Part shown: in pieces, positions 1-61,600 of the stretch
How positions within the stretch are numbered: position 1 is the first letter of the stretch
Layout: each line of letters opens with the position of its first letter
Made by a program: the position numbers and the translations under genes
Origin: Botryllus schlosseri
Lineage: Eukaryota
Direction: 5' to 3'
Assembly (NCBI GenBank): GCA_051294905.1
Contig: CM119381.1
Location: 25,668,001-25,732,000, forward strand
DNA length: 64,000 nt
The notes under the pieces: model-generated
Told to the model about the DNA's origin: nothing
Database searches by the model: none
Seen by the model: the letters and a program-made list of their open reading frames with translations, nothing else

Positions 1-121
1 ACTAGTGAACGATGATTATACAAGAACATAATCAGAGTCGGAAATTATTCTCGTCATCTAGTGCCGTATAAATTACTAGAGCCTAGCGTAATGATTCGAG
101 CACTCACATCTACCCCTACAT

Positions 122-4900: not shown

Positions 4901-7900
4901 TCATCATTCATGACTTGGAAAGACAATTTACATTCTAACAATTAGTCCAATCGTACCGGAGAGAATTGGGCTAGTGAATCATAAGTATTTGGTCGTATAA
5001 AGTGTCGAATGTAAAACAATATCACATAATTGTCACCTGGATAGTCATCCATGATCAACCCTTCCGTTATGGAGGGTTCCGCTATCGACGGTTCGCTGAT
5101 AGCGTTTCGTAAAAATTCGTTTTCTTTATAACCGCCTTTCACCGAATAATCTCCGATGCACCGGGCGCATTCGTTTATACCTGGTACAAAGCACGAGTTA
5201 CTCCTACAGATTCTAAAGGTCTTAACTGTAACACGCGTCTGGAGTGTCAGGGTCAAATTAGAATAAAACGATGCAGAAATTTATCGCTAGCGAAATACTT
5301 GAGTTGACTTTTGACTTGTGTGGACATAAACGGGTCTGTGATCTTTGGAATAGTGATTCAAAAGCGAGTGAAAATCTAGGGAAATTTTGCAGACCAGTGT
5401 TATTATCATTGATTGCTGTGTGCACTAGGGCTCTTCAAAATTGACTTTTTATCTCAAATCGCACTGGCTACTTGATAAAATTGTTAGGTTAGGCCTACCT
5501 ATTTTAAGCCTACACACCAAATTTGGTTCAATTCCAACCAGTAGCCGAATTGCTACAGGAGAAGTTTCTATTGATTAGATAAAAATTTTCAAATTTTCTG
5601 TTCACCCCATGAAAGTGTTAGGTTGTCTATAGAAACGATGTTCACCAAATTTGGTTCAATTCCAACCAGTAGAAGCAGAGTTATTGCCTTCGAAGATTTT
5701 GGATTTGAAAAAAATAGTATTTACGGTGGGCACCACTATAATAAATAATTAAAGAATTGGTCACCGTAAATACTATTTTATTCATAATCCAAATTTTTCG
5801 ACGGCAATAACTCCGCTTCCACTGGTTGGAATTGAACCAAATTTGGTGAACATCGTTTCTATAGACAACCTAACATTTTCATGGGGTGAACAGAAAATTT
5901 GAAAATTTTCTGTTATTTATTTTTATATAATAAATAGAAACTTTCTTCTCCTGTAGCAATGCGGCTATTGGTTGGAATTGAACCAAATTTGGTGTGTAGG
6001 CTTAAATTAGGTAACCTAACAATTTTATCAAGTAGCCGGTGTGATTGGAGAGAAAAAGTCATTTTTGAAGAGCCCTAGTGTGCACATTATACAATTGCCT
6101 TAGACAATGACGACTTATTGGGTTGCCTAGTTTCAACATCGCATTGCGGTGTGACATAGAATACAGACTCTCTACGGCACGTTGAACAACTCACCTAATT
6201 TCCCACGATTTTGCAACTTTTCAATATTAATACCCAGATTTTTTAACCTCGCCAGTTCTTGATTTTGATAAATGTTGTGATCCACGCTGAGTTGCTGAAC
6301 CTGTAGAAAGAGAACGATAGTCATACTTGAAAAATGTCATTTCCATGAATGCTGCCCAACACTGCACACTAGGGTTGTAAAAAAAAACTTTTTTTCCAAA
6401 TCTCACTCGCCTAGTTACTAAATCGTCAGGTTGTCCAAGAAAACGATGCGCACACCAAATTTGACTCAATTCCAACCAGTCAATCTTGAATTGAATTTTT
6501 TAATTTATTAATAAAAATGAAAAAAAAAATTTCTCAAATTTTTCTGTCAACCCCATGAAATTGTTGAGCTGTCTTCAAAGACGATGCAAAACAAATTTGA
6601 GTCAATTCCGACTTGTAGAAGCGGAGTTAGTCGCGTTTTTCGTTGATTATTGTCGGATTATCCTTGATCCGGGGATTATCAAGGAAAAACTCAAATAGTT
6701 CCGCTTCTACTTGTCGGAATTGACTCAAATTTGTTTTGCATCGTCTTTGAAGACAGCTCAACAATTTCATGGGGTTGACAGAAAAATTTGAGAATTTTTT
6801 ATTTTATTTTTAATAATAAATTAAAAATTTCAATTCAAGATTGCACGGCCTTTACTGGTTGGAATTGAGTCAAATTTGGTGTGCATCGTTTTCGTGAACA
6901 ACCTGACGATTTAGTCAGTAGGCGAGTGAGATTTGGAAAAAAAGTTTTTTTTGAACAACCCTACTGCACACGCAACGCTTCCGACGCTGCTTTCAACGCA
7001 AAACTTTTAGGAGATACGACATTAATACTCACTTCAAGGTAGTTTTGGGCTGCGTTGAGCTGGCAAAGTACGGCTCTACACTCCCCGACGTTTGCGACAA
7101 ACAACTTATTATTAATAACGAGCGCCACGACCGCTGTAGTCCCCCCTGAAAGAGAGCAGACAAAACTAAATTAACACAAATTATGATGTTAAAGTTTATA
7201 TTGGAGCAATGTCCATGTTTCAATAAACTATATCTTATACCGTGTGTGAGATGAAAAATGTGTCCGAGATCCAGCAACCCAACATCAAACTTTGGTCAAC
7301 AAAAATTTCTACATAAGCTGAATCTAATCAATCTTGCTGGTGGGTATTTAACTGGTCATTGTAGAGCAGGGGCGTAAGACTCATGTAAAACACGTGCCAC
7401 ATCATCATATTTGCGGCTTCAACCGGCCACAAACCTTATAGGTACAATTTAAAACAAATATGACAGTTTAGAGCAGACATGACAGTATTTGAAGACACAG
7501 AACTTCAATATATAACTGAATAATGTTTACATAAACTTGAAATAAACCACAATAATTTTAGCTGACCTTCACTGCGATGAAGAATCGTCAACAGCTGGTT
7601 GAGAATTCAAAAGGACTTCGCGTGTCAACAGTCCAGTCATCAAATTCATATAAAAGCATTTGGCAGATAGGCTGGGCAACTGGCAACATTAATCAGGGGC
7701 CATACCAGTGACAGAGAAACAATTTTTAGTCAGTCCCAAACAATGTTCCCTCTAATTTTTGACGGGTCTGCGCACACTCATCAACTCACTGCGCAGAAAA
7801 CAATGCGTAACGACTAAAAAAAAGGTCATCACTTCGGATTTTTTGTGCGCAAATTAGATTTTCTGTGCGCAGAGACCGTGAAAGCACTGCGCATTTGCGC

Positions 7901-18706: not shown

Positions 18707-19379
18707 ATAAATTTATTTCAGAGTCTAAAGTTTCCTTCAATTAAGATTAGGTAATTTTAGTCTTGTGGATGAAAAATTAGTCTAATTGACAGCACAGGTT
18801 GCAATTGTTTAAATCACAATTATACGTTAATAGTTCAACTGCAAACATATTTTAATATTATTATTTATATGTATCTAATATCCTAGGCCTATATAAGTAG
18901 CCTATACTTCAACACCTAACATCATAATCCCACCACTAAAATCACAGATCGACTTTTCAATGATTGAGTATAATGAGTATCCACAACAGAATATAGGTCG
19001 CAATATCACCTGCATAGGTCTATGTTATTCTATAATTGACGTATTAACTTCGCACAAAAATATATAACTTATATAAGCCGAGTTTGTATTAATGTTTCTT
19101 GACGCCAAGTATCATCATCATCATTTCATTAAAATTTTTATCAAATCAGTACATCACAAGATTGAAGTAATGGTAAGTATTCAGTATATTATCAAATCAT
19201 TTGATCTACCTACCTGACTAAATACTGGTGCCAGTAATCTAATTCTCAATTGAAACACATCATCAACTGCATTCATGATAGCCTACGCGACTCGATCAGA
19301 CCAAATCTTACTTACAAGTAGACACTCGTCATACTCATAACTAGATCATATCAATCAACAGAAACAGTACCATAGCATT

Positions 19380-19490
19380 AATATTTTGTGATACGATTGT
19401 TGATATACGATGTTCTTTTGAATTCTCTACTAGTTGCTGACGATTACCCCTGACGAGTGTCAGCCGAAAATATTCGGGTTAATTTCAATC
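19380..19490 (+). repeat. Family B repeat (hammerhead-bearing, Penelope pLTR-like)
   Basis: Shares tgttcttt..aattctctactagttgctgacga...gggtt.atttcaat with copies at ~31245, 41190, 50700, 51765, 59779 and 60085. Confidence 0.85.
19436..19480 (+). ncRNA. Minimal type I hammerhead ribozyme (intact copy) in Penelope-like repeat family B
   Basis: Stem I accc(19446-49)/gggt(19476-79), core CTGACGA 19450-56, G..C pair 19457/19465, GAAA 19466-69, palindromic AATATT stem III, UUC triplet with cleavage after 19475. Upstream gctgac is complementary to loop II gtcagc. Confidence 0.7.
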
Positions 19491-20604
19491 ACTATCACAC
19501 ACACACACAATCACTATTTGTATACACAAGGGAATGCTAAGTTTTTATATATCTTCCATAAAGCCTATAGTATTTACGTAGTTTGTCAGTAGGCTACGTT
19601 ATTGTTCAATTTGCGTTACCTTAAATCAAAAGGCGGTTGCTATCAAGTAACAAGATTCGTGAAACAAATGTGAGCTCAACGTAATATTTGCAGGTATTGA
19701 CCAGCATTGCAAAGAAATCTATGGGAGCAATTTTTTCATTTAGTTGACAGTCACAACCTGCACGGTGGTCATGGTGCATAAGGCAGATACTTCACAAATG
19801 TTGGAAGGTCAATCAGTAACTCTCGGTTTACGGCCTCAAACTATATAAAGCGCTAAATTGCAGGAATGTTGTCATTGAGACAGTTTTCTGTGATTTAATT
19901 ATCAAATAAAATTTGAATGTAGAACACACAATATACGATATAATAGTTTTAGCATATCCACACTGCAATAACATAACATAACATGGTTGGGATCTGAACA
20001 AGTCACACACAATGTACAATGCGATAAGACACAATGCAATGTCAATGCATCGATGCAATAAACATCAATGTTTTTGGCGACACTGCTCACTCAGGTCATG
20101 GTACTCTATTCCAAATTTATTGACAATGGACTGATGATTTTAAGAAAACAACGTGCTCAAATTTACATTGCAACACAACTTCCTTCCCTTGTGCATACAT
20201 ATGCTTAACCGACTTGGGACTTGACCAACTGTGATTTAACAGGTATGGGTAATTTATCACTCATTTCAAACACGAGCTGCATCAGTCCTCTACAAATAAA
20301 CAGCACACTCGTGAAATTTGGCAAACTGAAGTTATATGCATACTGCCCAATTAACTACACGTCTGCACACGACACAACAACTAACTTTGCTGAATAATTT
20401 CGGCTCGGCCTCTCCGAATGGCGAGAGAACTCACTTTCGGATACAATTTTGCGGGCCAGTAGCTATGGAATTTCGCGAGAATCGATCGCCATCTCGCGGT
20501 ATAGTAAGAACCCAAACATGTAATGACAATCACTGGACTGTTCTTTTATTATAGCTCAGTGGGCTATGTATAACCGCAAATTTCGACCACGATTAGTGAA
20601 TTTA

Positions 20605-30700: not shown

Positions 30701-32560
30701 AGATTCGCGATACCTTGAGCCATCTGCGCGACGCTCTGCAATGGGGAAAAGGTGCGATGTTGTTTGGGCGTGACGGCCTGTTCGCAATTGTGCAACATTA
30801 GACAATGAGCTTGGCATTTTTTAATACCGATTCGTGCGTCCTATTTGTGGTGAATCACGGGCAAGAGGAAATGCGGTCACAGCGCGCCTTTTGTCTAATT
30901 GCAATGACTATACATCAAGTACAGCGCTGGTGTTTCTGATACGCTGTACTCCCGGTTCTATCGAAGTACGGTATGACAGATGATTTATGGAAAAAATGTA
31001 ATTTTACAAATCCCGATTCTGTAAACTTGACACACTACTTGAGTGATTCCTAAGCTTTACTAACCTGACGAACCCTTACGAGGCCGTTCACACTTTCATT
31101 TGTAGAACTTCTTGTAGGTACAGAACTTCAATATACAATTGTATGGTATATCATATTGAAATGAACCCAAATATTTGTGTGCCTTGTAGTCTACGTTGTA
31201 TCAACATACGCCAACAAAGTCTATGCCAACAGAATGAGTTCTAAAAATAGTACATTAAGCTTAACCGATCTCTTCTCGTTATATTTGGTGATACAGTTGT
31301 TGACATACAATGTTCTTTCCGATTCTCTACTAGTTGTTGACGACTGGGCCTTGAGTGTCAGCCCAAAATCAGTGTTGTAACCAAGTCACGAGGCTCCGAG
31401 TCGCAAGTCAATCTCACTTTTATAGTTTTGACTTGAGTCACGTCGAGTCATTTTCAATTGACCACCGAGTCAAGTCCAAGTCGGCGAGCAGAGGGTCGAG
31501 TCCGAGTCATGGTATTATGACTCGAGTACGAGTCCCAAGTCATTGTGTTGACTGATCAGTTTCCAATTAAAGTCTGGAAAGCCCACTTTTTATAACTCTG
31601 TTTGGTGATATCGAATGGTTCGCATTCATAACATACCAATTTTCCTCACTTTTGGCAGTTTATGATCGCATTTTCAAGTACCAGTACCAATAGAAGAAAT
31701 TCCAACAGTGTGGTTACTTGAATATTCGAAATTACAATGAAATGTCGGTTTTGGCCGTCTGAGTCTCGTGTCATATGACTTGTCGAGTCATGCGCAATGA
31801 CTCGAGTCCAAGTCGAGTCAATACACAGATTGACTCGAGTTGAGTCATTTCCGTATTTTCAGAATGACTCGAGCGATCAGAAAATTGACTCGAGTCATTA
31901 CAACCCTGCCAAAAATATTCGGGTTCATGTAAATATGAATATATTATTCAATAATATGTTCTTATAGAAGCCTGGTTCGCAAAATTAACTGTGCATCAAC
32001 GGTGTTAGAAGAACAATACCATCATGAAACAACACAAAAAGAAGATAATTAATATTTACCGCAAATCGGTGTGACCTTCTGTATGACTCAGGTGTTTGTT
32101 TGGACCTCCAGCTTCCGAGTATGTACAACTGCAGTAATGATAAATTTATTTTGCAGGAAGCGGCCAAGTTGCGAAGCAAGACGAACCGAACGGCCCCGTC
32201 GATGAACAGTGTTTGAAATTGTCTCACACGATATCGTCTCGGTTATTAGGCTCGTTCCCGCCGGCCCAGTCGAAAAGTGCAGGCTACAAAAAGTACTTGC
32301 AATCTTGGAACAAAATCGCAGGGGAAATGTCAAGCTCCGGCGAGCCGGAGTACGAGGTTAAAGCTACGATGGCTGAAAAATATGTGACTCAACTTTTACA
32401 AGAAACCTATTCTGTTGCTGTGGGTACTGCGGTCGAGCTGAGGCTACAGGATAGAAGACAGTCTGGTACTGTGGCGGGACGCTTCCACGTTAACGCGAGG
32501 CACGATAATTTGACGCTGGCGTGTTGCGGTAGATGTACAGGAGATATCCATGTCGTATAA
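27728..32560 (+). CDS. BLZF1: Golgin-45 (basic leucine zipper nuclear factor 1), 4 coding exons
   Basis: Exons 27728-28120, 29760-29894, 30517-30751, 32157-32560. GDGME, QVNQELKRLLVASIGEDMGYHYERLATEK, CDVWRSKFLAGRV, LQWG and C-terminal GRFH..CCGRCTGDIHVV match recalled golgin-45. Confidence 0.93.
28463..29225 (+). mobile_element. Non-autonomous hAT derivative with decayed transposase C-terminal (dimerisation-like) coding remnant
   Basis: Termini cagggcaattttt/aaaatagcccta, TSD atcatatt/atcatagt. 28801-28988 reads DTIVRMKQHGLSPAAYAQLQCFQPTTAAVKCSFSILGKLLSKDRHFLPENV*KFLSLYYN. Second copy at 63637-64000. Confidence 0.75.
31245..31960 (+). repeat. Family B copy with degenerate hammerhead, split by a family A MITE
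   Basis: Family B sequence stops at gtcagcccaaaat (31369) and resumes as ccaaaaatattcgggtt (31909). Confidence 0.85.
31370..31908 (+). mobile_element. Full-length family A hAT MITE (TIR caGKgttgtaa, GACTCGAGTC-rich arms)
   Basis: cagtgttgtaa/ttacaaccctg. TSD cccaaaat/ccaaaaat (1 mismatch). Confidence 0.88.
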
Positions 32561-33336: not shown

Positions 33337-34782
33337 CTTCTGTCCACTCTGGATGGTGCTAGTGACAATGTAACACATATATAAGCTACTTAACAATGGC
33401 CATGATTCTTACTATTTATGCCTAGTTTTCTGTACATAGATACATATTATATAGACCTTACCGGTTGTGAAGCGCCGTACATTTCGAATTTGAAACGACT
33501 GCTGTGTGAATTTCTGTGCAATAAATCGAGTACACATTTTCGGATGACTTGGCTATCTTCGAATTGTTATGCAACTTGGAGCCACTGTGCGAGAATCGCG
33601 GCGTTGTGGTCGTCACACTGATTTGAAGAGAATTGATAGGTACGGAACTTGAAAATACAATTGGATAAAGTAGACTCGAATGTTTACGGCTGGCAATCGT
33701 CAGCAACTACTATATAGGCTTACCATATTTTGGAAATCTAAAAAGAGGACACTTTTCCAGAAATTTGAGACTTGCAAAACCGGAGAAGAATTCTCAAAAA
33801 CCGGTGAATTTTTCCCACTTTGTGATCGGTTGACTAAAAAAAAGGTCAAAAATACCGCTTTTCTTCCCGCATTGCTAGGTGGATGACTAAAAAAAAAGGT
33901 CATCTTTCCGCCCAGAGCTAAAATAACCGTTTTTCCCTCCGAAATACCCGCCGGAGCGTCAAAAGGAAAATACTAGTTCGCGGCACTCTAGTACCCTGAG
34001 TGGCGAGTAGGCTAGTTTGGTGATGAGCTATGTTGCATTGTAGCGCTGCTACACAAATACGTGAGGGGACTGCGGGCAACGAGCCCAGCCGATGTCGTCT
34101 TCGTAACCCCTTCCATAGTGTTGTAGTTTTACCCTAGGCTCCTCCTCGCCATCCGTCTGCGTAATCAGCGTCTGGAGTGGAAAGAGGCCGCGCTAAAGTT
34201 GGCATGTCAGGAAGTATAGGTCTGGTGTAAAATGGCCATGGAATGCTCGAGCAGTCCAATCGTCTCACCGGTTGAGAATCACTGTACTAGATAATTCAAA
34301 CGAATTTCGTACCCTTGCTTTTCGTCACGCCACGTACGTCGGAGCGTTGTTTTGAGCTTTGCTAACACACCGCTTGTATATCGCGTGCAAGGGCAGCCCA
34401 GCACAACTTCCCACGCAGGCTTTATCGACGATCATCAAGAGATTTAGCATCATATCTCGACTACGAGATCACTATCTGCTTGTGGCATAATATTCCCTCA
34501 AGATGAAAATAATGCTAATCCTCTAACAAGGCCTTAAAGGTCAACTGCATCTTCATAGACAACTTTGCGGAATCATGTTCAGTATTTGTTTTCATACCAA
34601 AATTACCGCCTTTCCGTGTTTCCACTCCATCGGAAATTGCCGTAATTTTGACTCAAAGTCCCAATATTGGTATGTTTACAGAAAAAGCAGAATGTGCATT
34701 GTGACGTCAAGTACATGACACATCTTCTCGCCACCGATCCCAGCGGCTGTTAGTGTTCTCGCAGTTTTTATTCTAGTCAGTT

Positions 34783-41100: not shown

Positions 41101-44100
41101 CGACCAAACCTAATCCCAGCACATATATACAAATGGCCTAATTCCCCAAGTGCCATACATAATAATTCCTATTCAGTGCAATTGAATAGCATATTCATAT
41201 TGAAATGAACCCGAAAGTTTTCGGCTGACACTCGTCAGCAACTAGTAGAGAATTGGAAAGAACATTGTATCACAAAACATGACGTCACCACAGCATGAAA
41301 TTTCGTACAAGAGAACGTTCAATGCACTATTTTTAGATATTCAGTACAACATCCTGTTTCGAATACATTAAGCAAAATCGATGCATTGCTTTCATAATAA
41401 CAACAGTTATCACATTTCTAATGCCATATTCATCAAGTGCCGAACTCGCAAAGTATTGTATATCCCAATTCATGCTTGGATTCGGTATTCATTTTCGAAT
41501 TTATCAATATGATATCAATCAATCAATGCATCACTTTCATTATAATAGTAGAAATAGTTATCACTAGGGCATCGCTAGGGCAAGTTTTAGCAATTCTTTT
41601 TTACAGCCTCCTAAATACTCGGAAGTTATGTAGAATGCAGTTTTAATCTGTTTGAAGGAATATTGTGGCGCGACTTTTTGCAACTTTTGTCCATTTTTTT
41701 CATGCAACTTTTTCAATTTTTCATGAAAGTTTGTTCGATTTTTCATGCGATCGACTATTTACTGGAAATATTTGGCAGTATATGTAAATAGATCGCTTGA
41801 TTATGTCACTGTTTTTTTTTAGTCAACCGACCAAAATGTGGTCTTCTAGTGAAACTTTTGCAAATCAAACTTTTCTACTGCAAAACTTGTCCTGGTTATC
41901 ACAATTCTAATGTCTCATTCAACACAAAAACCAACTCACCTCGCTGTCCATCTTAGCTTTATCCGCGTGAGACATCTGCTGGTTTGCGTTTTCCTGCTGT
42001 TGCAGCCCCACGCTGGGCGCCGGCGTCATGCAATCCTGCGCGATGTGACCGCGACCCCCGCATTTCGTGCACACCGTCGTGTTAGTGATGTTCTGATTCT
42101 CCGGCCGCAACCATTCTCTCTCCCTGTCAACGAGCGCAAAGCGATCAGTTTCCATCCCCAACACAGAAAGATACAATCAAACACAAACCGTGGCATTTGG
42201 TCGTCTCTGAGAGTCCCGTTCAACCGCGCCAATTCCATGAGCTGGTTCTTCCGCAAGTCGTTTTGCCCTTCTGGTTGTTCAATTCCCTGTCATAACCATA
42301 TCAAATTTAACAAACCGGGCCATCGCGCATCGGGGGGGGGGGGTTGAAGTTTCCAAATTTACCAAATTAGCATTTTAATAAAGTAATAAAGAAATTAAAT
42401 ACAATCAAGTACAAGTGAAAATTCTAATGTAGGATATATAAGCCGGTATAAGCTTCACTTTTGCATGATACAAACACTGCATTTCACATACAAAGGAATA
42501 CGTAAAACTCAGCAGGAGATGGCACACCGCTTTGAGCTGCAAACTGGGTATTATGGCTCCTGCAAACAATCACAACACAAAGCTACAGAGAGAAAACAGG
42601 GGCAATAGCCAGATGAGCTCAACAAGGAATTCAAAGCACATGATGTTATTTTAAATACTCAACACCTCCAAGGCGAACTTGTCTATGATGGCTATTTACT
42701 CTGCAAATGACAAATTAAGACTTAACATTGAGGGTGCACACAATATTTAGCCATCACCTGTTTGATAATCCTGTTGATTTCGGCAGTCGCTTTCTGTACG
42801 TCTTCTATTTTCGTGCCCGTTATCAGAGCATGTAACGGCTCGTCTTCCCCGGGAAGAGGCATTCCGTCCTTCCTGCCGATCTTCCCTTCCTTCACCGATC
42901 CTTTCCCTCTGATCATGATCTTGCAGTTACTCTGAAAATTCAATATTATTAGTGTTTTTTTTTAAAAAGGAACTACCTTCCCGGTCGTGCGATCAAAGAA
43001 AGCAACTCAAATCAAAAATTACCTCTTTCTCAATTTTCTTCAACGTGTTTCCTCTCGGACCGATGAGAAGACCGACGAAATTGATGCTGGGGTTCAAGTC
43101 GGCCGGTATGTTGATCTGCTCGCTGATTCTTTGAATCGGAGGCCTACGAAATAAATCGAAAACGTTCACACACATCACAGATAATTCACCGTACACTTGT
43201 ATAAAATTCGCTGCTGAAAACGAACTGCATACCGCTATTGGTGGATACTGACCGCTCAGACAGAATTGGGTATAAAACTCAAAAATCAATAATTAGATTG
43301 GAGCCTACATGGTGTGAGCTCAGTATTGGGCCCATCGACCAAAACTTGTTCATCCAGTTTGTCTTACCACAGTTAATTTGTAAAATTACATATATGTAGG
43401 ATAGATATATGCGTTTATAATACATATTTATCAAACACAATCTTACTTATTGCAAGTACGGTATATTTATTTCTGACACATTATCATTATCAGATTTTGT
43501 GACCAGGTGACGACATGTAGCGAATCAAAGGTTGTACCGCTGGCCATCATTTCACAGAAAAGTTCCTCTTATTTTGTAAAACGAACTTCAGCATGCCGTT
43601 CTTAGTAGCAGTGCTTCGAAACGGACTAGTGACGTGGACAATTTCAATTTTATAAAATGGCGGTAATTAATATTTACTTGTAGTCCATGGGAGGCTTGTA
43701 GTTTTCGTTGATGCGGATCATGTCCTGGATCAGTTTGTGTCGATCTTCCTCGTATTTCTTCCTGGTGCGATATTCGCGCGTGTTCAGTCTCTTGCCGTCA
43801 TTGTTATAAATCGGCTCGGGAGACGGCGACCTAAAATGACAGCGGGAAAGAACGGATGAATAAGGTAGACATCACCATAGCTATATATCTACCGGTAAAT
43901 GTAGACTACAGACATTGAATACACAGTGTCTACAATTCGGCATCAACAGCCAAAGATTCTATTTCAGCCGTTAGTTTCATCACCAATGGGAGTAAACAAA
44001 TCGTTTAACGGTAGGGCTGGGCATTAAGAACGAGTAATCGAGCAGTGCCAGTCAGGCTGTTCAGTAGTGATCAACCTGCGGAATTGCCAATCATTACTTT

Positions 44101-47890: not shown

Positions 47891-50800
47891 TTAAATGTGA
47901 GGTAAGGACAAAATTAAAGTCTTTTTCCGTCGATTGAACTTTGCGGCTGACGAGTCTTCACTGATCATCTCTGTAAGTTGTAATGATAAATAATATTTTT
48001 CCGCTACCAGCAACTCCACGGAATTCTGAAAGTAAATTTGATGTTCCTGCACTTATATTTCGCTGTGATATCAAGCTACTAAATGTGCTAAATCAGAATT
48101 TGTCCTTAATATAAAGCGGTCTGGGGTGTCTCTATTCAGTCAACATTGACATTATAGCTAACCATTTTACTTGACTAGCATCAATCTTGGCAACTACTCA
48201 AGTAGAAGAATGAATTTGTTCTCAGAGGGGTCGAAATAGATACCGATAGCCTATCTTGCTACTGAAGTAGAATATTAAAACAGCACCTGAGCAGGTCAAG
48301 ATAGTAGCCCACAAACGACATTGATGTAACCATAGAAATTCGACTGTGGGGTGCAGTCATGGACAGATAAACGAAGTTACAATATTGGACACAGCGATGT
48401 CACACGGAAATAGGCTTCACTTCAACAATAGAATGGCACTTGCGAACTGCGAAATTTTCTAGAGGAAAATTTGAATATGATTCGAACCTTTGTGATATTC
48501 AAATCACACTGCGAGACACTATCAACATCGGGAAGCATAATTTTCAAAATATAATGTGGGTTTCCGTCTTTGTTCAATTCCTCGAGCAAATACTCCGGTT
48601 TTGGAAGATGCGTTGCATCGTTTTCTGAAACAAAATGAGCCAGCACTTTACAAAATGCCGAATGCTGATTCTTCAATACTCAATAATTACACTGCCGTTA
48701 CCATTATGAAGGGCCTGCCTGGATGTCTGATAATTTCATAACTGGTCGCTAGAAGCCAGCTGACAATTTAGCATGGTGACAAAATGAGTACAATATTTCG
48801 AGGGAGCCAGGTAGGGTAGTAACGACTCGACTCGCGATTCTGTGGTGACTCCATTTGACTCGAGTCATTTTTTAATATTTGGAAAATTACTTGACTTGAA
48901 CACCAAAATGAACTGAACACAATTACTTGGACTCGAGTCTCAACACTGTGAATCGAGCTCAACCTTTGAACCCTGACTTGACTCGGTAGTTAATTGAAAA
49001 TGGCCCAACTTTACTATAAATGTAGAATTGACTTGTGAGTCTTGGTTGCATTCCTGAAGCCGAAGAACATGAATTAGTTCCGATTTAAACTTGAAATGGA
49101 AGAATGAATTTCGGGTAATTCCAGGCCAAATCAACCGAGGCAGATCACCACATGTTTCAAAATAAACATCAAATGCAATTCCCAAGCAACATAGATCAAT
49201 TTCAAACTGAACAAAAGTTATTTCGCGGAAATACATTCAGCAGTTTGGGATTGATGGGGATTTGAAAAAGTGCACTTTTTGTGCTCAGTCAACTGTTAAG
49301 AGGTATCATTTTTTAGATCATAAACTTTAGAATTTTACTGTAAATTAGTCTTTCTCTGTGGCTTTAAATGGAGTACATTTTCAGAAAGTACATAGCCTAA
49401 CCCTCTTTTGTCTTATTTTCAGCGCTCACCACAGGACACGAGAGTTGACCATTTTTAGGTAGATTTTCAGGCAACAAATATAGCAGATGGCAATATGAGG
49501 CGCAATAGTTAAGACTGGGCTGAAGTGATGACCGTGATTTAGTCATCAACTACCGTTATTTCACACAACTACTGAACAACAGGGTCTGCGCTAGATAGAG
49601 GTTAAGAAACACTCATTTATTTGTACCTGTTTCGTCACTATCACTTTCTCCAATTTCCTGTATTAAATTATTCTTTTCAACTTTTGTCTTTTTGCCACCC
49701 AGCACGTTTTCGATTGTGATGTCTCTTTCAAATTGGCGGACTCCATCGCTCGCCTTCTCCTCATTCGACATCATTGACATTCTTTTTATAAGTTCTGCCG
49801 GCGAGTTTACTGTAGCGCCAGTCGCCATTTTTTCAATATCATCATCCTTAGACAGTTGAGACCTTGTCATGAATAAAGTGCGTGCGTCTGCAGGTACGTC
49901 GCCTCGGTAAATTTCTTTGTACTTCTTATATTGACGATGAAGCTTCGTCTAGATAATATTCATTTCAATTAATTGCTAAAATTTCAATACACCACAAGAC
50001 TGCGATACAACAAAAGATAGGAAGGTTTCGAAACGACTTGGAGTAGTCTTTGAAATCAGACACCCACCTGTCCTAGGTGATGCAAAAAAGGAGGCATGCG
50101 CACTGAATAAAAGGTAGAAGAAGATAATATAAAAGTACAGGTGACAAAAAAAGGTGGCATGTGTCTGAAAGATCGATATGTCATGTCGTGGTCTGGTAAA
50201 TTAGAGGATTGACTAGTATTCATTCAGTAGAAATTGTTTGTATTTTGACTTGAATGTGGACATGCTCGATGACTGTCGGATAGCCGGCGAGATACTGTTT
50301 TACAAATCAGGTCCAGCATATTTGATAGAGGGATCATCTTTTTTGTCCACCGTATGGTGGTTGGACGACGTGGACGCGCGTGTGTTGTACTTATGCACTT
50401 TTGATGCCGAGGTAAAGAAGTTATTGCAGTTATCGGGGCAGTGGCCGCAGTGGAAATGATACATAAACTTGGCAATTTCTAGTTTCCGCATATCTTTTAT
50501 GTTTAGGACACCGAATCTTTCGAGCAGTGATTTGCTGGACACACATCCTGGTCCCTTCGGGGCCCTGGCTATGATACGGAGGATATCCTGAGATTGACGG
50601 GTTCATTGAACGGCCCTAACCGGAAACAGTCTGTGATGAAATGTGTGTGCCTAGAAGTCAACATTTATCAAAATTTGCTAACAGGAGTTTGTGTACCTTT
50701 TAAAAACAGTACATTGAGCTTAAGTGATCTTTTCGCCCCAATTATCCGAAATTTCATGCCATTAACGTCCTATTTTGTGATGCGATTGTTGGTATACAAT

Positions 50801-53340
50801 GTTCTTTCCAATTCTCTACTAGTTGCTGACGATTGCCCCTGACGAGTGTCAGCCAAAATGTTTCGGTATATTTCAATATGAATATACTATCCAACTGCAT
50901 ATTGAAATGATTTTTCAGCTAGAACAGAGTTTTCTCAAGTGAGTTAACTACTTGTAACCAGACGCTGTTAGTAATGAAGTATTCTACTTCTTCCAAGAAC
51001 TCAAGATCGGTTAAACCTTAACACACTTACTCGTGTGTTATATGCAATTTTGAAAGAGCCCACCTAACAGCTGCTAACGTATGCAATCTACTTTTTGCCA
51101 AAATACTTTTCAAATATTCATTTTCTACTTGTAATTGGGTACAAATGTACAGCGTTACTTCAACTTCAATAGTAACTCAGACTACTTACACCACCTCTGC
51201 TTGCAAACAATGGAGTATGTTTTTTCAGCACATTTACTTCATCATATTCCCAGGTATAAGTGATCTTAGTTAATACTTCCCATAGTCCTACGAGTGAGAT
51301 AGTCAGATCCTACTATATACAGTAATATAAAAGAAAAGTGGGTAAATATGACTAGTTCTCAAGTGACATATCACAGTAATGCAACATAGGCCCAACTTAC
51401 AGATGGTTTCTATGTAAAATTACAAATGGATATTGACCATGACCATGCAGTGGAGACGCTATCCCATGTTATTTTTATAATTATCATTATACCCACAATC
51501 TTTTCATACATGCACTTTACAGCAAATATACACTGCACGTAATAAGCTTGATCATAAATTTATGCAGAATGAGATCAAACAATTACTTTGAGTTTGTCCT
51601 CAGTGAGATTTACGACCAATTCATAGAGTCGATCGCGATTCACATCTGTGTCCGTGCATTCTTCATAAATTTTGTCATTCATTGCCACTGGCACGACTAT
51701 TTCTATTATACCTGTAAATAGAGAAGTAAGTTTTCATGAATGAAGTAGAAATGGGAAAAATAATGAGTGTCAGCCGAAAATATTTGGGTTTATTTCAATA
51801 TGAATATACGGTATGCAATTATATACCACCAGGGGCGTAGCCAGCCGAGATAAAAAGGGGGTAGAACTGAATAAAGGGGGCAGAATGATCCTCTATGTGT
51901 CATACCTTTAGCGATAGCGACTTCTGTATTCCGTAAGCTTTTGAAAGCGTAACTAATTGGCGGATCTAATCACTGAAAGCGAGTTAGCAATCAACAACTT
52001 GCACGGGGATCATGTTACGATGCGCACGCGCTCATCCTGTGACAGTGCAGGAGATCTTATTTGCATTCAAATAAGTAATCGACCTTGAAACAATACAAGA
52101 ACAACATTTCACGACGAACAATCTATACAGCGCAGAATCTGTTATATCTTCATGAATTTTGACATGATTCAATTCACGTGTAAGAGGAACGTCTTCTCGG
52201 CGTTTTAATTTCATTCATTTCGAACATGGCGCATATACTAGTTGTACCGGCGTGTGAATAATGACTTATTCGGAAAGCGAGGGAATCGCAAACAAGTTTC
52301 GGCGCGGCTATTGAAGGCTGAATGCGTCCTGGTGGGATACCGATCACGAAAGGCATAATCTAGTATGACGTATAGATGGTCATTGAGGTCAAGACAATGC
52401 ACAACAATGGCGTCAAAAATAAAATGCGAATCGAATGTATTGTGTCTTCACGCTGTTTTGGGAAACAGGCTTGAGTTCGGCAAAGCACGAATCAGATGCG
52501 ATTGCTTCAAAACATGATTTCATTCACTTATAAGTTGTTATTTTCATGTTATTAATGTTCGTTATCGTTTACAATGAACTGTTGATGAGAAAACAACGCG
52601 TGAGCGACGCGACAAATGTTATTATTGCTCGACGACTGCATTCAGAATAAAGGGATTAAGCTGATCGCTTACCCTCGCCGAGAGAAAAATTTAACAATGC
52701 CCCTTTCACGCTTGCATAGACGCGCTTCCGTAGACGAGATATCGGCGAGAAAAAGGCATGTAATCAGCGTCGGCGATCGGCGTCGCGCGAGGCAAATTGA
52801 AATTAGGCGATATCGTGAAGAAATGTTATTATAGCAATAGCGTTGACTTGGGATTTTCGGGATAGAATCGAGCCTGGAAGGGGGTAGAACGTTCTTCAAT
52901 TCTACCCCCCTGTCTACGCCCCTGTATACCACCAAGAGTATCTTCAGACTATGAATATGTTTTAATATCGGAAATTACCCTTTGTTGTTCTTTTTGACTT
53001 CTCGCCTGCAAACATTTTTATTGGGTCTTCGTCATTGTCCGGGTAAGGCATTCTCTTCCAAGCGCAGATATTAATAAAGACGTAACCAGAATCTTCATTC
53101 TACAAGTATAAGCCAAGCATGTTGTAACGCAGATTGAAGTTCCACTGTGCTGTCCTTGATATGACTTACCAGAGTTTTCGTATAAATGCACACTCTAGGC
53201 TCGGGCGGGGAGTTGAAAGCCTTATGCTCTTCCATTTGTTTTTCAATGAAATTTTTGTAAGCATCGGGGTCGGATTTGGCGAGATCATCCAGCCGATTCC
53301 ATATATATTCGGCTTGTTCTTTGAATTCCTTCGGTTCCAT
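47891..53340 (-). CDS. PIH1D2: PIH1 domain-containing protein 2, 6 coding exons
   Basis: Exons 53170-53340, 52979-53099, 51587-51711, 49627-49948, 48488-48624, 47891-48025. WNRLDDLAKSDPDAYKNFI, PEPRVC, FINIC.W, LPDVDSVSQCDL and AKF.RRKKTLILSLP match recalled PIH1D2. Confidence 0.88.
48813..49056 (-). mobile_element. Internally deleted family A MITE
   Basis: tagggtagtaacgactcg ... gacttgtgagtcttggttgcattcctg, with gactcgagtc motifs. Confidence 0.6.
49960..50545 (-). mobile_element. 5'-truncated CR1/L2-group LINE with ORF2 C-terminal remnant (50213-50542)
   Basis: LNIKDMRKLEIAKFMY...HKYNTR...SIKYAGPDL*NSISPAIR..SSMSTFKSKYKQFLL fits the C-terminus of this LINE group. In-frame TAA where Trp is expected. 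3'UTR shared with 490-1690. Confidence 0.8.
50700..50910 (+). repeat. Family B copy, hammerhead G12 lost
   Basis: gctgacgattgcccCTGACGAgtgtcagcc then aaaatgtttcggtat instead of GAAAatattcgggt. Confidence 0.85.
51765..51810 (+). repeat. 5'-truncated family B copy
   Basis: gagtgtcagccgaaaatatttgggtttatttcaatatgaatat; the CTGA core is absent. Confidence 0.8.
51830..52924. mobile_element. 1.1-kb non-autonomous hAT-type element in PIH1D2 intron 2
   Basis: TIR caggggcgtag/ctacgcccctg. Perfect TSD tataccac (51822-29, 52925-32). Confidence 0.9.
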
Positions 53341-58600: not shown

Positions 58601-61600
58601 ACAGATAAAAGACAAGTTTCTGGGAGTATTTTTCAATTATTGGTCCTGATGTACGAGACTTGAATAAGTCATATAGAATATATCGAGTCATTTTCCAGTT
58701 TTAACAAAATGAAGCGAGTCAAGTCGAGTCAACAAAAGATTGTGACTTGAGTCATTACAACCCTGGTAACAAAATCCCACATTAAACTTAGATATATCAA
58801 TCCTGAATGGTTAGTAATGATTGGTGCAGCAAGTACTTGTAATCTAGAAAACTTACCATTTCTTGTCCTTGTCATTTTCTGGCAAGAAGTTTCTCTCTAT
58901 CATCCAGTCTTCCTTCAGGAATTTAGTCCTAGCAAATATCAATAGATTTAATATCTGCATTTTTAAATTTAAACCGGGGGCCGATATCACGACGAATTAT
59001 CGAACACACGATTTTCGTAATGGTAATATCGTGTCATCATTTAGCAAGGCAAGATTACAAGGTTATTACTTATTACAATTCGTCACAATGTTACTACAAT
59101 CATGCATGATGAATTAAAATTAAATGTCACATATATATGATTCGATTTCTGTAAGCTATTTGTGGTAGTTATTGCAAGATCAAACGGATCACATCTATAA
59201 TTACAATGCAAGATTGGAATGCAATGCAAGATTGCGATACAATTAGTATCCGTCCATGCATATATTTTTGCAGGCGGAGTACTTACATGTATTCATTCTT
59301 TTCTAAAACAGAGCACAGTCATTCTAATATCAAAGAATCTTGATATATAACAGCAACTCCTAAAAAATCAGTATTCCTACTAATTCTAATATCCATTTCC
59401 GATGTTTACTGTCACAGAAACGGTATCTTACATGTAGTTTCTTACAGAATCCGGCAGAATAACAACGCATTTTTGTCCTGCTTTCAATTGTTTGCAAGCT
59501 TGGACGGCGACATGGGCATTTGCTCCACTACTTCCTCCTAGAAAAAGAGTGAAATCTCAATACCGATGATTTGATCAGCAAGAATGTCACAATTGTAATG
59601 GTTGTCACTCATAACTTACCGCACAAGAACCCTTCTTCTCTGATGAGACGACGCGCCATGATAAAGGATTCTTTATCAACAGTTTTGTACCATTGGTCCA
59701 CAACAGATCTGGACAAAAGCTGGTTTTGAGAAAAGTATTTGTAACATTGTGGATGGTATTGAGCAGAATATCATCATCACATTGAAATAAACCCGAACAT
59801 TTCTGGCTAACACTCGTTAAGGTTAGGAATTGGTACGGGATTCAAAAGAACTTTGCATACTAAGAGTCTTATCGCCATCATCATAATATATCACAATGAT
59901 ACATCATAATAATATATATATTCTGAAGCACCACGTCCTATTTAGTGCATTTTGGCTGAGCAGAGTTTATGAGGTCACCACGAATTGCATGACACGGAAA
60001 CACATTTCTTTTGCTAAAGAGACAACAGTCTGGTACTTCACCTCGATTATTTAAAATTTCATACCAGTGATGATGATTTGGTGATTGTTGATAATCAATG
60101 TTCTTTCCAATTTTCTACTAGTTGCCGACGATTACCCCTGACGAGTGTCAGCCGAAAATATTCGGGTTTATTTCAATATGAATATGTTATTCAGTTGTAT
60201 ATCGAAGTTACACATAGGTGATCAAAAAGCTGTTGGGAAGTAGCCTATTTCGATAGACGAAAAACCAATTTTGGACAAGGAAAAGATAAAATTATAAGGC
60301 AACATGGTGCAGCACAGCTAAAACGGCAGGCTAATCACTTGACATAGAGGAATATTGTGTTACCGGTCAAGTACAGTGGGTATGAAGTCGTATCCTGTTC
60401 CTTCAACTTCATAAAACTTGATATCGCTTTTATTCATTTCCTCTGGTTGAGCCAGAATTGAGCCATACGGATCAACACCAACAACCTGGTAATTGAAGAA
60501 CAATCAAGTTATCGGTGACCATTTTCCAATCCAAGTCATACTTTGCAATTTGGACACTTCTCTTTGATTTTACGGCCAATTCCACACACTGTTCCACCGG
60601 TACCAGCTCCCACAACAACCATATCGAGGTCACCTAAATTTCAGAACATTGCATCAGCAACATCAGAATATTGATGCGGTCAGTTTTTAGCTACATCTGA
60701 GACAGCGCTATGCTTTTGATTATCAAAATAAAATTATACCTCCGCACTGTGCTATGATTTCTTCAGCGGTAGTGTCGTAATGCGCAACTGGATTTCCTGC
60801 ATTGGTGTACTGCGAATGCGGTAGAATGTTAATAAGCTGTATAAAACGTACTGCAAACATGGGAAAATCATGCTGCGAAAATTATAAGCTGAAATACTCG
60901 GACGCGGTTCAAGTAGTCTCTGATAAGTAGGACTAGCAATTTCGCACTGGACTCAAAACCGAAGTTTTGTAAAATCCTCTAATACAGTGGTTCTCAACCT
61001 TTTTCACCCCGCGGACCGGTAGAATTTCAAAAAATGTCTGGCGGACCGGTGAACTTTCAAAATTGAAATGAATCCAAAATGTGGAGTATGCAACCGTTTT
61101 TTGTCATTATATGGTGCTAGAGAGTGACATTTTATGGTAGTGAGTCTGCCGAGTCGAGGTAGAATTGCCTTGTCCAGATAAACGTGATACCGCCGAGAAT
61201 CGTTCACAGTCTTTCGCGCCGAAGGACGTGGGTTTAACCGACCACGCCAACTCGAATAATATTCTTCCTTTTGACAATATCAAGACAAGAAGCGTTTCGG
61301 AGTCGAATCAAGCACTTTGTCGTGCTACCTTGCTCATTGCCCACTACCACCAGATGCTGGCTACTCGGGCAGCTACAAATGCAATGCGTACCGCAATAAA
61401 ATACCTTACAGCAGCTATACCGGCCATGCGCAAATCCGGGCCGAAAAAGCACTTCGTCAGCCCACCCCCAAAAACGTTGGTCTTGGGCCCCCACAAGGCG
61501 ATAAGCAAAACTTCCGGGGGCTTCGCCCCCAGACCCCACAGTTGGGTGGTTAGGTTTACACCTGTACTAGTGAGCACATTCATTCTACTCAATGTAAGCA

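What the first reader, a model, noticed from the sequence alone, without database searches (positions are those of the whole stretch)
19436..19480. Abundant repeat family encoding a minimal hammerhead ribozyme with a pseudoknot/anti-core switch
Seen: accc-CTGACGA-G-tgtcagc-C-GAAA-atat-TC-gggt. This has all conserved hammerhead core nucleotides, a 4-bp stem I, a 1-bp stem II and a palindromic AATATT stem III. Upstream GCTGAC (19436-41) is perfectly complementary to loop II GTCAGC. The core CTGAC can itself pair with the same GTCAG, so the upstream strand would both form a pseudoknot and free the core. Seven copies occur in 64 kb, sharing 3' ends with variable 5' truncation. Known: short-stem-III hammerheads that cleave as dimers through palindromic helix III are associated with Penelope-like retroelements, and loop II pseudoknots boost activity. 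Inference: a high-copy Penelope-derived or retrozyme-like family. No RT or GIY-YIG ORF is seen in the window.
Basis: partly seen in the sequence, partly recalled or inferred. Interest (0 to 1): 0.8.

Follow-up and report, generated by a model that had tools for sequence, protein, structure and literature searches.

The report
Penelope retrotransposon hammerhead with pseudoknot helix
The motif is the self-cutting "hammerhead" RNA carried by a young, very abundant Penelope-like jumping gene (here a dead tail fragment); the pairing is known, but this ribozyme builds its second helix from a strand lying upstream, and distant relatives keep that arrangement through matching mutations.

Summary
It lies in a 5'-truncated, ORF-less fragment (19381-19489, 96% identical to the active unit) of a Penelope-like element (PLE).

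Elsewhere in this genome the full element is a 2692-bp tandem unit with an 848-aa ORF (RT, DKG and YVDD motifs, GIY-YIG-like C-terminus). More than 100 copies have an identical endonuclease region. Insertions show the PLE signature: 10-13 bp target duplications, head-to-head truncated arms, and two 3' ends about 35 nt apart.

The hammerhead has every core nucleotide, a 4-bp helix I, a palindromic helix III and no helix II hairpin. Helix II is formed by the upstream GCUGAC pairing with GUCAGC. In 23 distinct sequences from PLEs of 31-64% protein identity this helix is 96% paired, and 5 of 6 pairs change on both sides. C3-G8 and the palindrome also covary.

The proposed "anti-core switch" is not conserved. 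No Rfam hammerhead model detects the motif. RNA-seq gave no evidence of cleavage.

A hammerhead with helix II replaced by a pseudoknot is already known (PDB 8YDC), so this is a new variant. Earlier follow-ups of this scan reached the same reading on other DNA of this genome.

The parts
19381..19489 (+). 5'-truncated, ORF-less 3' fragment of the Penelope-like element (pseudo-LTR part). It may continue in degenerate form to about 19525, after a (CA)n-containing insertion at about 19490-19518.
   Evidence: blastn to the full unit (L063:3651-6410) matches unit positions 2598-2706 at 96.3% identity. Sequence read.
19436..19441 (+). PKa, GCUGAC: the 5' strand of the pseudoknot that replaces helix II.
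   Evidence: Exact complement of 19459-19464. Covaries with PKb in relatives.
19442..19445 (+). Linker GAUU joining the distal end of the pseudoknot to helix I. Its first G is nearly invariant and could pair with U19458 (G.U here, G:A in most relatives).
   Evidence: Alignment columns 12 and 31 of A6. A G:A cap of the pseudoknot helix is described for PDB 8YDC (PMC11300833).
19446..19449 (+). Helix I, 5' strand (ACCC).
   Evidence: Pairs with 19476-19479. All four helix I pairs change on both sides in relatives.
19450..19456 (+). Hammerhead core C3-U4-G5-A6-C7-G8-A9 (CUGACGA).
   Evidence: C3-G8 covaries to U3-A8 in relatives (CG 17, UA 4, UG 1).
19457..19458 (+). G10.1, which pairs with C19465 (11.1), plus a single connector nucleotide U.
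   Evidence: G-C in 18 of 21 scorable distinct sequences, G-U in one.
19459..19464 (+). PKb, GUCAGC: the 3' strand of the pseudoknot helix II. In this family it is also complementary to core positions 3-7.
19465..19468 (+). C11.1 and core G12-A13-A14.
   Evidence: Invariant GAA in all relatives.
19469..19474 (+). AAUAUU: A15.1..U16.1, the palindromic helix III. It can only form between two ribozyme copies.
   Evidence: Relatives carry other palindromes: AAGCUU, AACGUU, AGUACU, AGGCCU, AAAAUUUU, AAUAUAUU and AAAAGCUUUU.
19475..19479 (+). C17, with predicted cleavage after 19475, followed by the helix I 3' strand GGGU.
   Evidence: Position follows from the hammerhead numbering. Cleavage was not shown.
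60083..60209 (+). Second well-preserved copy of the PLE tail. Its hammerhead at 60119-60175 has one pseudoknot mismatch (GCCGAC). It is paired head-to-head with a degenerate inverted arm at 59766-59832 (-).
50744..50906 (+). Decayed copy with G12 lost.
41179..41336 (-). Decayed copy with a 13-nt deletion between the two CUGACGA direct repeats. The deletion removes helix I 5' and leaves a plain hairpin.
31098..31369 (.). Head-to-head inverted pair of decayed arms: 31098-31176 (-) and 31173-31369 (+).
31908..31952 (+). Short decayed fragment of the PLE tail.
51765..51809 (+). Fragment 5'-truncated inside the hammerhead.
33666..33709 (-). Decayed copy with an internal deletion in the hammerhead.
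7497..7630 (-). Old, 77%-identical remnant.

Best explanation
Window 19436-19479 is the hammerhead ribozyme motif of the pseudo-LTR of a young, very abundant Penelope-like retrotransposon. The window copy is a dead, 5'-truncated tail fragment whose motif happens to be intact.

In the full element (a 2692-bp unit, often in tandem) the motif sits 106 nt after the stop codon of one unit. Its predicted cleavage site is 14 nt before the ATG of the next.

The ribozyme is a type I hammerhead with a normal core and a 4-bp helix I. Helix III is a 6-nt palindrome that can form only between two copies, so the active form should be a dimer. Helix II is not a hairpin. G10.1 pairs with C11.1, and the six nucleotides between them pair with a strand 8 nt upstream of the core.

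That upstream strand joins helix I through a 4-nt linker, so helices I and II are covalently tied at their distal ends.

Inferred function: cutting multimeric or read-through transcripts just upstream of the ORF, probably helped by the element's own protein. Reverse transcription starts about 33 and about 68 nt downstream of the cleavage site, so templates are uncleaved at that copy.

Shown: the element's identity and anatomy, and the conserved covarying structure. Inferred: self-cleavage, dimerisation and biological role.
For: Element identity:
- At least 1481 candidate copies of the 127-bp tail in the genome.
- 2692-bp tandem units carrying an 859-codon open frame, 848 aa counted from the ATG, with an RVT_1 match.
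- DKG and YVDD motifs and a VVYEYRC..GYVGRT GIY-YIG-like C-terminus.
- More than 100 copies with a 100% identical 187-aa endonuclease region.
- Target duplications of 10-13 bp and head-to-head arms.
- Bimodal 3' ends about 35 nt apart. This matches the 'tail' and two RT start sites of PLEs (PMC11167929; PMC8557442).

Structure:
- In 11 PLEs of 40-64% protein identity, the best complement of PKb always lies 7-9 nt upstream of the core, with 5-6 of 5-6 pairs.
- On an ungapped MAFFT alignment not fitted to any structure, the pseudoknot helix is 100% paired. Five of its 6 pairs change on both sides. With the 3' partners slid by 1-3 columns, only 26-38% of cells pair.
- In 23 distinct sequences the pseudoknot is 96.4% paired with up to 4 pair types per position. 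C3-G8, helix I and the helix III palindrome also covary. No shuffle out of 500 reaches the observed score.

Precedent: a crystal structure shows a pseudoknot taking the place of helix II, with the same local order CUGAUGA-G-A-CUGGA-C-GAAA, and that ribozyme is fast (PMC11300833).
Against: No cleavage evidence. In bulk and single-cell RNA-seq no molecules begin or end at the site. Reads cover only the tail fragment, on both strands, and 96% run on into unrelated flanks. They therefore come from dispersed dead copies, and the 5' part of the ORF is uncovered.

All insertions extend past the cleavage site, so cleavage there is not needed for retrotransposition. Frangieh et al. found the same for an Anolis PLE.

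Published PLE hammerheads cleave poorly in vitro (PMC4209133).

No Rfam hammerhead model matches.

The larger alignment was fitted to the pseudoknot by the covariance model. The relatives come from metagenomes of unknown hosts.
Confidence: 0.8

Rival explanations
1. The conserved pseudoknotted motif is real, but its selected function is not self-cleavage. It could be a binding or positioning element for the PLE protein, a promoter or 5'-UTR element, or a translation-initiation structure just upstream of the ATG. On this view the hammerhead core is kept for folding rather than catalysis.
For: No read ends at the cleavage site. Insertions always include the uncleaved site plus 33-76 nt beyond it. 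Published work found that cleavage is dispensable for insertion in vitro and that the ribozyme depends on protein (PMC11167929). The motif lies 2-100 nt upstream of the ATG in all relatives.
Against: Every catalytic nucleotide is invariant (U4, G5, A6, A9, G12, A13, A14). The C3-G8 tertiary pair covaries as CG, UA and UG. H17 is never G. That pattern is expected for catalysis rather than for a generic binding site.
Confidence: 0.12
2. One reading: the motif is a regulated riboswitch-like hammerhead. The core is normally locked by the CUGAC/GUCAG hairpin and is released when the upstream strand invades.
For: In this family, and in L064, L065 and L067, all 5 anti-core pairs are possible. The non-pseudoknot minimum free energy fold uses that hairpin.
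Against: The anti-core pairing is not conserved: 2-3 of 5 pairs in L066, L069, L070, L071, L072, L073 and L078. The upstream helix is always conserved and is more stable (-9.6 against -5.4 kcal/mol). The resemblance between PKa and the core probably reflects shared CUGAC sequence or a 13-nt duplication. Deletion variants at 41201-41244 and 33666-33709 fit that origin.
Confidence: 0.06
3. It is a MITE or foldback DNA transposon, or a chance hairpin, that merely resembles a hammerhead.
For: Many copies occur as inverted pairs 250-3000 bp long. The window holds only short non-coding copies.
Against: The arms are 5'-truncated copies of an RT/GIY-YIG element. The two ends are asymmetric and target duplications vary from 10 to 13 bp. 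Covariation across elements rules out chance.
Confidence: 0.02

Closest known systems
Pseudoknot-containing (PK) hammerhead ribozyme. Crystal structure PDB 8YDC (Zhan et al. 2024, PMC11300833). That paper credits its bioinformatic discovery to Weinberg et al. 2015.
   Same: Helix II is replaced by a roughly 6-bp pseudoknot between the stretch separating A9/G10.1 from C11.1/G12 and a strand 5' of helix I. The connectivity is the same: PK 5' strand, linker, helix I 5', core, PK 3' strand, GAAA, helix III, cleavage site, helix I 3'. The local order is the same, CUGAUGA-G-A-CUGGA-C-GAAA against CUGACGA-G-U-GUCAGC-C-GAAA. A G opposite the nucleotide after G10.1 could cap the helix in both.
   Different: In 8YDC the 5' strand sits in the loop of a 5-bp hairpin (helix IV), and an A-rich linker docks in that hairpin's minor groove. 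Here there is no conserved helix IV, and the linker is only 1-5 nt. 8YDC has a long helix III and acts as a monomer. Here helix III is a 6-10 nt palindrome that needs a second copy. The setting here is a eukaryotic retrotransposon.
Minimal hammerheads of Penelope-like elements (Cervera and de la Pena 2014, PMC4209133; Lunse, Weinberg and Breaker 2017, not readable here)
   Same: Location in the pseudo-LTR of a PLE. Type I topology. A 4-5 bp helix I. G10.1-C11.1. A minimal palindromic helix III implying dimers. The U3-A8 core variant. Thousands of dispersed truncated copies, some as close inverted pairs.
   Different: The published motifs have a large helix II hairpin (6-8 bp) with an unpaired nucleotide between A9 and 10.1. 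Here helix II has a single intramolecular hairpin-type pair, and the rest comes from upstream. RNAmotif descriptors and Rfam models built on a helix II hairpin would miss it.
Non-circular permuted hammerheads, types SGC, CSG and GCS (Eckert et al. 2023, PMC10085705)
   Same: The hammerhead core is kept while the helices become pseudoknotted. One strand of helix I is joined directly to one strand of helix II by a short linker, which may hold the two helices together.
   Different: Those are rearrangements of three intact blocks, and they come from metatranscriptomes or bacteria. Here the block order is the ordinary type I (C-G-S). Only the 5' strand of helix II has moved away from the CUGANGA box.
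Poseidon PLE of Anolis carolinensis (Frangieh et al. 2024, PMC11167929)
   Same: Tandem units. A hammerhead at the pLTR-ORF junction. Two internal reverse-transcription start sites a few tens of nt apart inside the start of the ORF (the 'tail'). Both target strands are used, which fits head-to-head insertions. No RNA-seq read ends at the cleavage site.
   Different: The Anolis hammerhead has an ordinary stem-loop II and overlaps the start codon. Here the cleavage site lies 14 nt upstream of the ATG and helix II is a pseudoknot.

Membership tests
Hammerhead ribozyme | Conserved core: C3 U4 G5 A6 N7 G8 A9, G12 A13 A14, A15.1-U16.1, and H17 that is not G | tested here: met
   CUGACGA ... GAAA ... 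U-C at 19450-19475. The core is invariant or covarying (C3-G8 to U3-A8) in 23 related sequences.
Hammerhead ribozyme | Three helices I, II and III around the core | tested here: inconclusive
   Helix I is present (4 bp, covaries). Helix II is present only as G10.1-C11.1 plus a 6-bp pseudoknot (covaries). Helix III is possible only between two copies (palindrome).
Hammerhead ribozyme | Match to curated covariance models (Rfam Hammerhead_1, _3, _II, HH9, HH10) | tested here: not met
   No hammerhead hit at gathering score in the window. None at E<=10 on 19300-19600. None at E<=1 on 12 related loci.
Hammerhead ribozyme | Site-specific self-cleavage 3' of position 17 | tested here: inconclusive
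   RNA-seq shows no excess of read ends at the site, but full-length element RNA is not covered at all. A biochemical assay is not possible with these tools.
PLE minimal hammerhead (Cervera and de la Pena 2014) | Lies in the pseudo-LTR of a Penelope-like element | tested here: met
   The motif recurs every 2692 bp between ORF copies in L063.
PLE minimal hammerhead (Cervera and de la Pena 2014) | Minimal, palindromic helix III; helix I of 4-5 bp; G10.1-C11.1 | tested here: met
   AAUAUU, ACCC/GGGU and G19457-C19465. The palindrome covaries in relatives.
PLE minimal hammerhead (Cervera and de la Pena 2014) | Large helix II hairpin (6-8 bp) with a bulged nucleotide between A9 and 10.1 | tested here: not met
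   Only 8 nt separate A9 from G12, and they cannot form a hairpin. Their partner is upstream.
PK hammerhead (PDB 8YDC type) | Helix II replaced by a roughly 6-bp pseudoknot with a strand 5' of helix I | tested here: met
   GCUGAC/GUCAGC. The helix is 96-100% paired, with double-sided changes at 5 of 6 pairs.
PK hammerhead (PDB 8YDC type) | The 5' pseudoknot strand lies in the loop of a hairpin (helix IV), with an A-rich linker docking in its minor groove | tested here: not met
   No conserved pairing flanks PKa in the relatives. The linker is 1-5 nt and not A-rich.
Penelope-like element (EN+) | [quoted passage not shown] | tested here: met
   RVT_1 match at 7.8e-09. KPDKGSGVV, YVDD and VVYEYRC..GYVGRT are present. 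Relatives carry Pfam RVT_1, DUF8422 and HTH_animal, and some carry PF01541 GIY-YIG. The ORF is not in the window itself.
Penelope-like element (EN+) | Tandem or partial-tandem copies (pLTR), an inverted 5'-truncated copy, an optional 30-40 bp tail, and target duplications | tested here: met
   Tandem units spaced 2692 bp. A 1392-bp perfect inverted arm pair. 3' ends at +33..46 and +64..76. Target duplications of 10-13 bp read by eye in L005, L007, L009, L010, L012 and L027.
Metazoan non-LTR retrozyme | Short (about 170-400 nt) non-coding units in tandem, each with a hammerhead, giving circular RNAs | tested here: not met
   Copies are dispersed, 5'-truncated pieces of the coding element. Tandem Repeats Finder found no short-period array in L063. 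Back-splice-like joints were not seen at the cleavage site.

The most novel reading that the evidence does not exclude
A whole clade of canonical (C-terminal endonuclease) Penelope-like elements, spread through marine animals, uses a hammerhead topology not yet described for retrotransposons. Helix II is a hairpin-less pseudoknot whose 5' strand is tied directly to helix I. This would replace the loop-loop tertiary contact by a covalent tether and be combined with obligate dimerisation through helix III. If so, descriptor-based and Rfam-based censuses miss a large class of eukaryotic hammerheads. PLEs reported to have 'only a hammerhead core' (as noted for some Naiads in PMC8557442) might carry the same solution. 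Because the crystallised PK hammerhead is unusually fast, these PLE ribozymes might also be far more active than the sluggish PLE hammerheads tested so far.
Probability: 0.4. Interest if true: 0.65.

Novelty: new variant of a known kind. Interest (0 to 1): 0.5.

Why it matters
The link between Penelope-like elements and hammerheads, and the existence of hammerheads whose helix II is a pseudoknot, are both published. Neither is news.

What the comparison adds is that the two meet in nature. A widespread PLE clade keeps, through many compensatory substitutions, a hammerhead whose helix II strand has moved upstream of helix I and needs no supporting hairpin.

This has three consequences:
- It gives a natural, high-copy and evolutionarily tested minimal version of the PK hammerhead.
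- It explains why standard models (Rfam, helix II hairpin descriptors) report nothing here.
- It suggests re-examining PLEs said to lack canonical hammerheads.

For the window itself the finding is ordinary repeat annotation. All copies are dead tail fragments.

Tried and rejected
- Rfam found no hammerhead family: gathering score on the whole window, E<=10 around the motif, and E<=1 on 12 related loci. The weak snoRNA hits are chance.
- The MITE/foldback reading, suggested by inverted pairs, was rejected once the arms proved to be truncated RT/GIY-YIG elements with asymmetric ends.
- The retrozyme reading was rejected because there are no short tandem units.
- Using the first CUGACGA (19437-19443) as the core was rejected. 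Helix I and helix II cannot then be drawn. It is simply PKa plus the linker.
- The Hydra-clade assignment was considered because the element is shorter than 3 kb. It is not supported, because the ORF has DKG rather than DKT. I did not determine the clade.
- RNA-seq gave no support for cleavage and no evidence for full-length transcripts. Reads come from dispersed fragments, so the data are uninformative, not negative.
- The covariance-model search of the genome returned only this family among the 150 scored hits.
- Lunse et al. 2017 and Weinberg et al. 2015 could not be opened. I therefore cannot exclude that this exact variant is drawn there.
- Supplements of Craig et al. 2021 are not held.
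- One phrase search failed on syntax.
- Complex prediction and structure prediction were not used because they were not relevant.

Full report
**1. The observation.**

- All hammerhead core positions are present.
- ACCC/GGGU gives a 4-bp helix I.
- Only G19457-C19465 can close a 'helix II'.
- AAUAUU is a palindrome.
- GCUGAC is the exact complement of GUCAGC.

The motif is far from chance. The 30-mer and its parts recur 3-7 times in the window against 0 expected.

No Rfam family, hammerhead or other, reaches threshold in the window. No hammerhead model scores even at E<=10 on 19300-19600.

**2. What the repeat is.**

The shared sequence in the window is only 45-185 bp long. In the whole genome (495 Mb) the 127-bp tail has at least 1481 candidate copies.

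Aligning 41 copies with their flanks showed three things:
- A constant 3' end (...AAGAAGCUCUUC).
- Variable 5' ends.
- Very often a second, inverted copy placed head-to-head, whose own 3' end lies about 35 nt earlier (...ACUAUUUAA).

Target duplications of 10-13 bp flank the pair. I read these by eye in L005, L007, L009, L010, L012 and L027. A script places the 3' ends in two clusters, +33..46 and +64..76 nt after the predicted cleavage site.

Longer copies led to the coding element:
- A 1392-bp perfect inverted pair has an ORF with a YVDD reverse-transcriptase motif and a VVYEYRC..GYVGRT GIY-YIG-like C-terminus.
- A tandem array of 2692-bp units carries an intact 848-aa ORF with RVT_1 and the KPDKG motif typical of Penelope-like elements.
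- More than 100 copies have a 100% identical 187-aa endonuclease region, so the family is young and probably active.

Tandem units, an inverted truncated partner, a 30-40 bp optional 'tail' and two internal reverse-transcription start sites are the published signature of PLEs (PMC8557442; PMC11167929).

The window itself holds no ORF piece. Its copy at 19381-19489 is 96% identical to unit positions 2598-2706.

**3. Where the motif sits in the element.**

In the tandem array the motif starts 106 nt after a stop codon. The predicted cleavage site is 14 nt upstream of the next ATG. Insertions therefore carry the uncleaved site plus the first 33-76 nt of the next unit.

**4. Is helix II really made with the upstream strand?**

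The ORF has hundreds of relatives at 40-64% identity, mostly on roughly 2.7-3 kb marine-metagenome contigs. I fetched ten of them, and then 25 more loci by protein pattern.

In every one a hammerhead core lies shortly upstream of the ATG. The layout is the same throughout: a 5-6 nt box, 7-9 nt (linker plus helix I), YUGANRA, G, N, a 5-6 nt box, C, GAAA, a palindrome, H, helix I 3'.

The two boxes are always complementary, but their sequences differ:

| Source | Upstream box / downstream box |
|---|---|
| Own family | GCUGAC / GUCAGC |
| L064, L067 | UCUGAC / GUCAGA |
| L065 | ACUAAC / GUUAGU |
| L066 | UCUAGC / GCUAGA |
| L068 | UCCAGC / GCUGGA |
| L069 | UCAAGG / CCUUGA |
| L070 | CGUGC / GCACG |
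| L071 | CUGGA / UCCAG |
| L072 | UCCCAU / AUGGGA |
| L073 | CCCAGU / GCUGGG |

An element with only 31% protein identity has UCCUAU/AUAGGA (L096).

Two alignments give the counts:
- On an ungapped MAFFT alignment of six sequences, fitted to no structure, the helix is 100% paired and 5 of 6 pairs change on both sides. When the 3' partners are slid by 1-3 columns, only 26-38% of cells pair.
- On 23 distinct sequences aligned by a covariance model, the helix is 96.4% paired with up to four pair types per position. This alignment is fitted to the helix, so it leans towards it.

In that second alignment other features also covary:
- The C3-G8 tertiary pair (CG 17, UA 4, UG 1).
- Helix I.
- The helix III palindrome: AAUAUU, AAGCUU, AACGUU, AGUACU, AGGCCU, AAAAUUUU and others.

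No shuffle out of 500 reaches the observed covariation score.

The G following the upstream box is nearly invariant. It faces the A or U that follows G10.1.

I conclude that the pseudoknot is a selected structure and that it is the helix II of this ribozyme.

**5. The 'anti-core switch'.**

In this family CUGAC (core positions 3-7) can pair with GUCAG. This gives 5 bp at -5.4 kcal/mol, against -9.6 kcal/mol for the upstream helix as a duplex.

Across lineages this alternative is not kept. Only 2-3 of the 5 pairs are possible in L066, L069, L070, L071, L072, L073 and L078, close to the chance value of about 1.9.

It may slow folding in this family, but it is not a conserved device.

The upstream box plus linker reads CUGACGA, the same as the core. 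Window copies at 41201-41244 and 33666-33709 have lost the 13 nt between these two direct repeats.

**6. RNA evidence.**

One bulk and one single-cell RNA-seq run of the same species label, plus two sets of contigs, were laid on L063:5700-7000.
- Depth is confined to 6228-6410, the part present in thousands of dead fragments.
- Depth is equal on both strands.
- 96% of the bulk reads continue into unrelated sequence.
- The 5' part of the ORF has no reads.
- No position shows an excess of molecule ends.

This neither supports nor refutes cleavage. The same negative result was reported for the Anolis element.

**7. Comparison with what is known.**

*(a) PLE minimal hammerheads (PMC4209133).* They share the location, helix I, G10.1-C11.1, the palindromic helix III, the U3-A8 variant and the dispersed or inverted copies. 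They differ in having a 6-8 bp helix II hairpin.

[quoted passage not shown] The crystallised RNA contains CUGAUGA-G-A-CUGGA-C-GAAA, and the complementary strand lies 5' of helix I. That is the same connectivity and local order as here. In that RNA, however, the 5' strand is the loop of a 5-bp hairpin (helix IV) with an A-rich docking linker, and helix III is long. Here no helix IV is conserved, the linker is 1-5 nt, and helix III needs a partner molecule.

*(c) Permuted hammerheads (PMC10085705).* These also have pseudoknotted cores, but by reordering whole blocks. Here the block order is plain type I.

I found no paper in the searchable library that describes a pseudoknot helix II in PLE hammerheads. 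The two most relevant papers, Lunse 2017 and Weinberg 2015, could not be opened.

**8. Mechanism proposed.**

*Shown:*
- The element is a PLE.
- The motif is its pLTR hammerhead.
- Helix I, the pseudoknot helix II, the C3-G8 pair and the palindrome are under selection.

*Inferred:*
- The upstream strand supplies positions 10.2-10.7.
- Its 3' end is tied by the short linker to the distal end of helix I, so helices I and II are held side by side without a loop-loop contact.
- G10.1 is joined to the far end of the 3' strand by one nucleotide. That nucleotide must cross the deep groove of a 6-7 bp helix, which is geometrically allowed in H-type pseudoknots (established knowledge, from memory).
- Two copies pair through the palindrome to complete helix III. 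Cleavage after C17 would then free the downstream ORF RNA from an upstream unit or host read-through.
- The published PLE work suggests that the element's protein assists folding.

The window copy is a solitary dead fragment and is not expected to do anything.

**9. Verdict.**

The variant is real and conserved, is probably undescribed for PLEs, and lies within two known kinds. Earlier follow-ups of this scan on other parts of the same genome reached the same reading, and I tested it independently here.

Noticed in passing
L066:543-588, L066:3342-3386, L068:2956-3001, L078:152-198 (related PLEs, not the window): Right after the hammerhead cleavage site and before the ATG, three related PLEs carry a match to the histone mRNA 3' stem-loop (Rfam RF00032). 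L066 scores 36.7 bits, above the gathering score of 34. It has a 6-bp stem, a UUUC loop and a following ACCCA, then a purine-rich AAAAGAG stretch like a histone downstream element. This could be a borrowed 3'-end processing signal for a non-polyadenylated retroelement RNA. The window's own family lacks it.
   Followed up: no
L063:6389-6395 with 6431-6437 (own family, outside the window); same place in L064-L067 and L069: A 7-bp stem, CUGUACC/GGUACAG, brackets the region where reverse transcription starts (the 'tail' end ...CUCUUC lies in its loop). It lies inside the first 27 codons of the ORF. It changes to UUGUACC/GGUACAA in L066 and L067, which is a compensatory pair. This resembles the AC-rich stem-loop at the RT start site of the Anolis PLE.
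   Followed up: partly
L064, L069, L072, L089, L094 (related PLEs): Core variant U3...A8 (UUGAUAA, UUGAAAA) in place of C3...G8, with a U3.G8 intermediate (UUGAAGA) in the L089 family. This is the same covariation reported for Cercyon PLEs of Schistosoma.
   Followed up: partly
window 19490-19518: A (CA)n-containing stretch (CACUAUCACACACACACAAU) interrupts the PLE tail right after ...UUUCAAU. Degenerate PLE sequence seems to resume at about 19519.
   Followed up: no
L022:1962-2077 and L023:1762-1870 (own genome): The same 115-bp PLE tail with hammerhead sits inside a different repeat. That repeat has its own shared flanks on both sides (upstream ...GAGCGGAUGAGUCAUGGGCGAGCUUUUCACC..., downstream ...CUCUCUGCGGGCCG...). 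Short GCGGGCCG-containing repeats also abut PLE insertions in L002, L005 and L024.
   Followed up: no
G000:C18:588405-642041: Five hammerhead hits at an exact spacing of 13,395 bp. This suggests a PLE fragment fixed inside a long tandem repeat.
   Followed up: no
window 41201-41244 (-) and 33666-33709 (-): Two independent decayed copies lack the 13 nt between the direct repeats CUGACGA...CUGACGA. Only a plain 6-bp hairpin remains (G-CUGAC-GAGU-GUCAG-C). This is either recurrent slippage or an older subfamily that predates the duplication.
   Followed up: partly
L063:6228-6410 (RNA-seq): The PLE tail is read at 100-600x in RNA runs on both strands, almost always joined to unrelated sequence. 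The thousands of dead fragments are transcribed as parts of host transcripts, while the ORF itself is silent in the sampled reads.
   Followed up: partly
L073:311-384 (-): A tRNA gene (56.5 bits) lies about 1 kb upstream of a related PLE on a metagenome contig.
   Followed up: no
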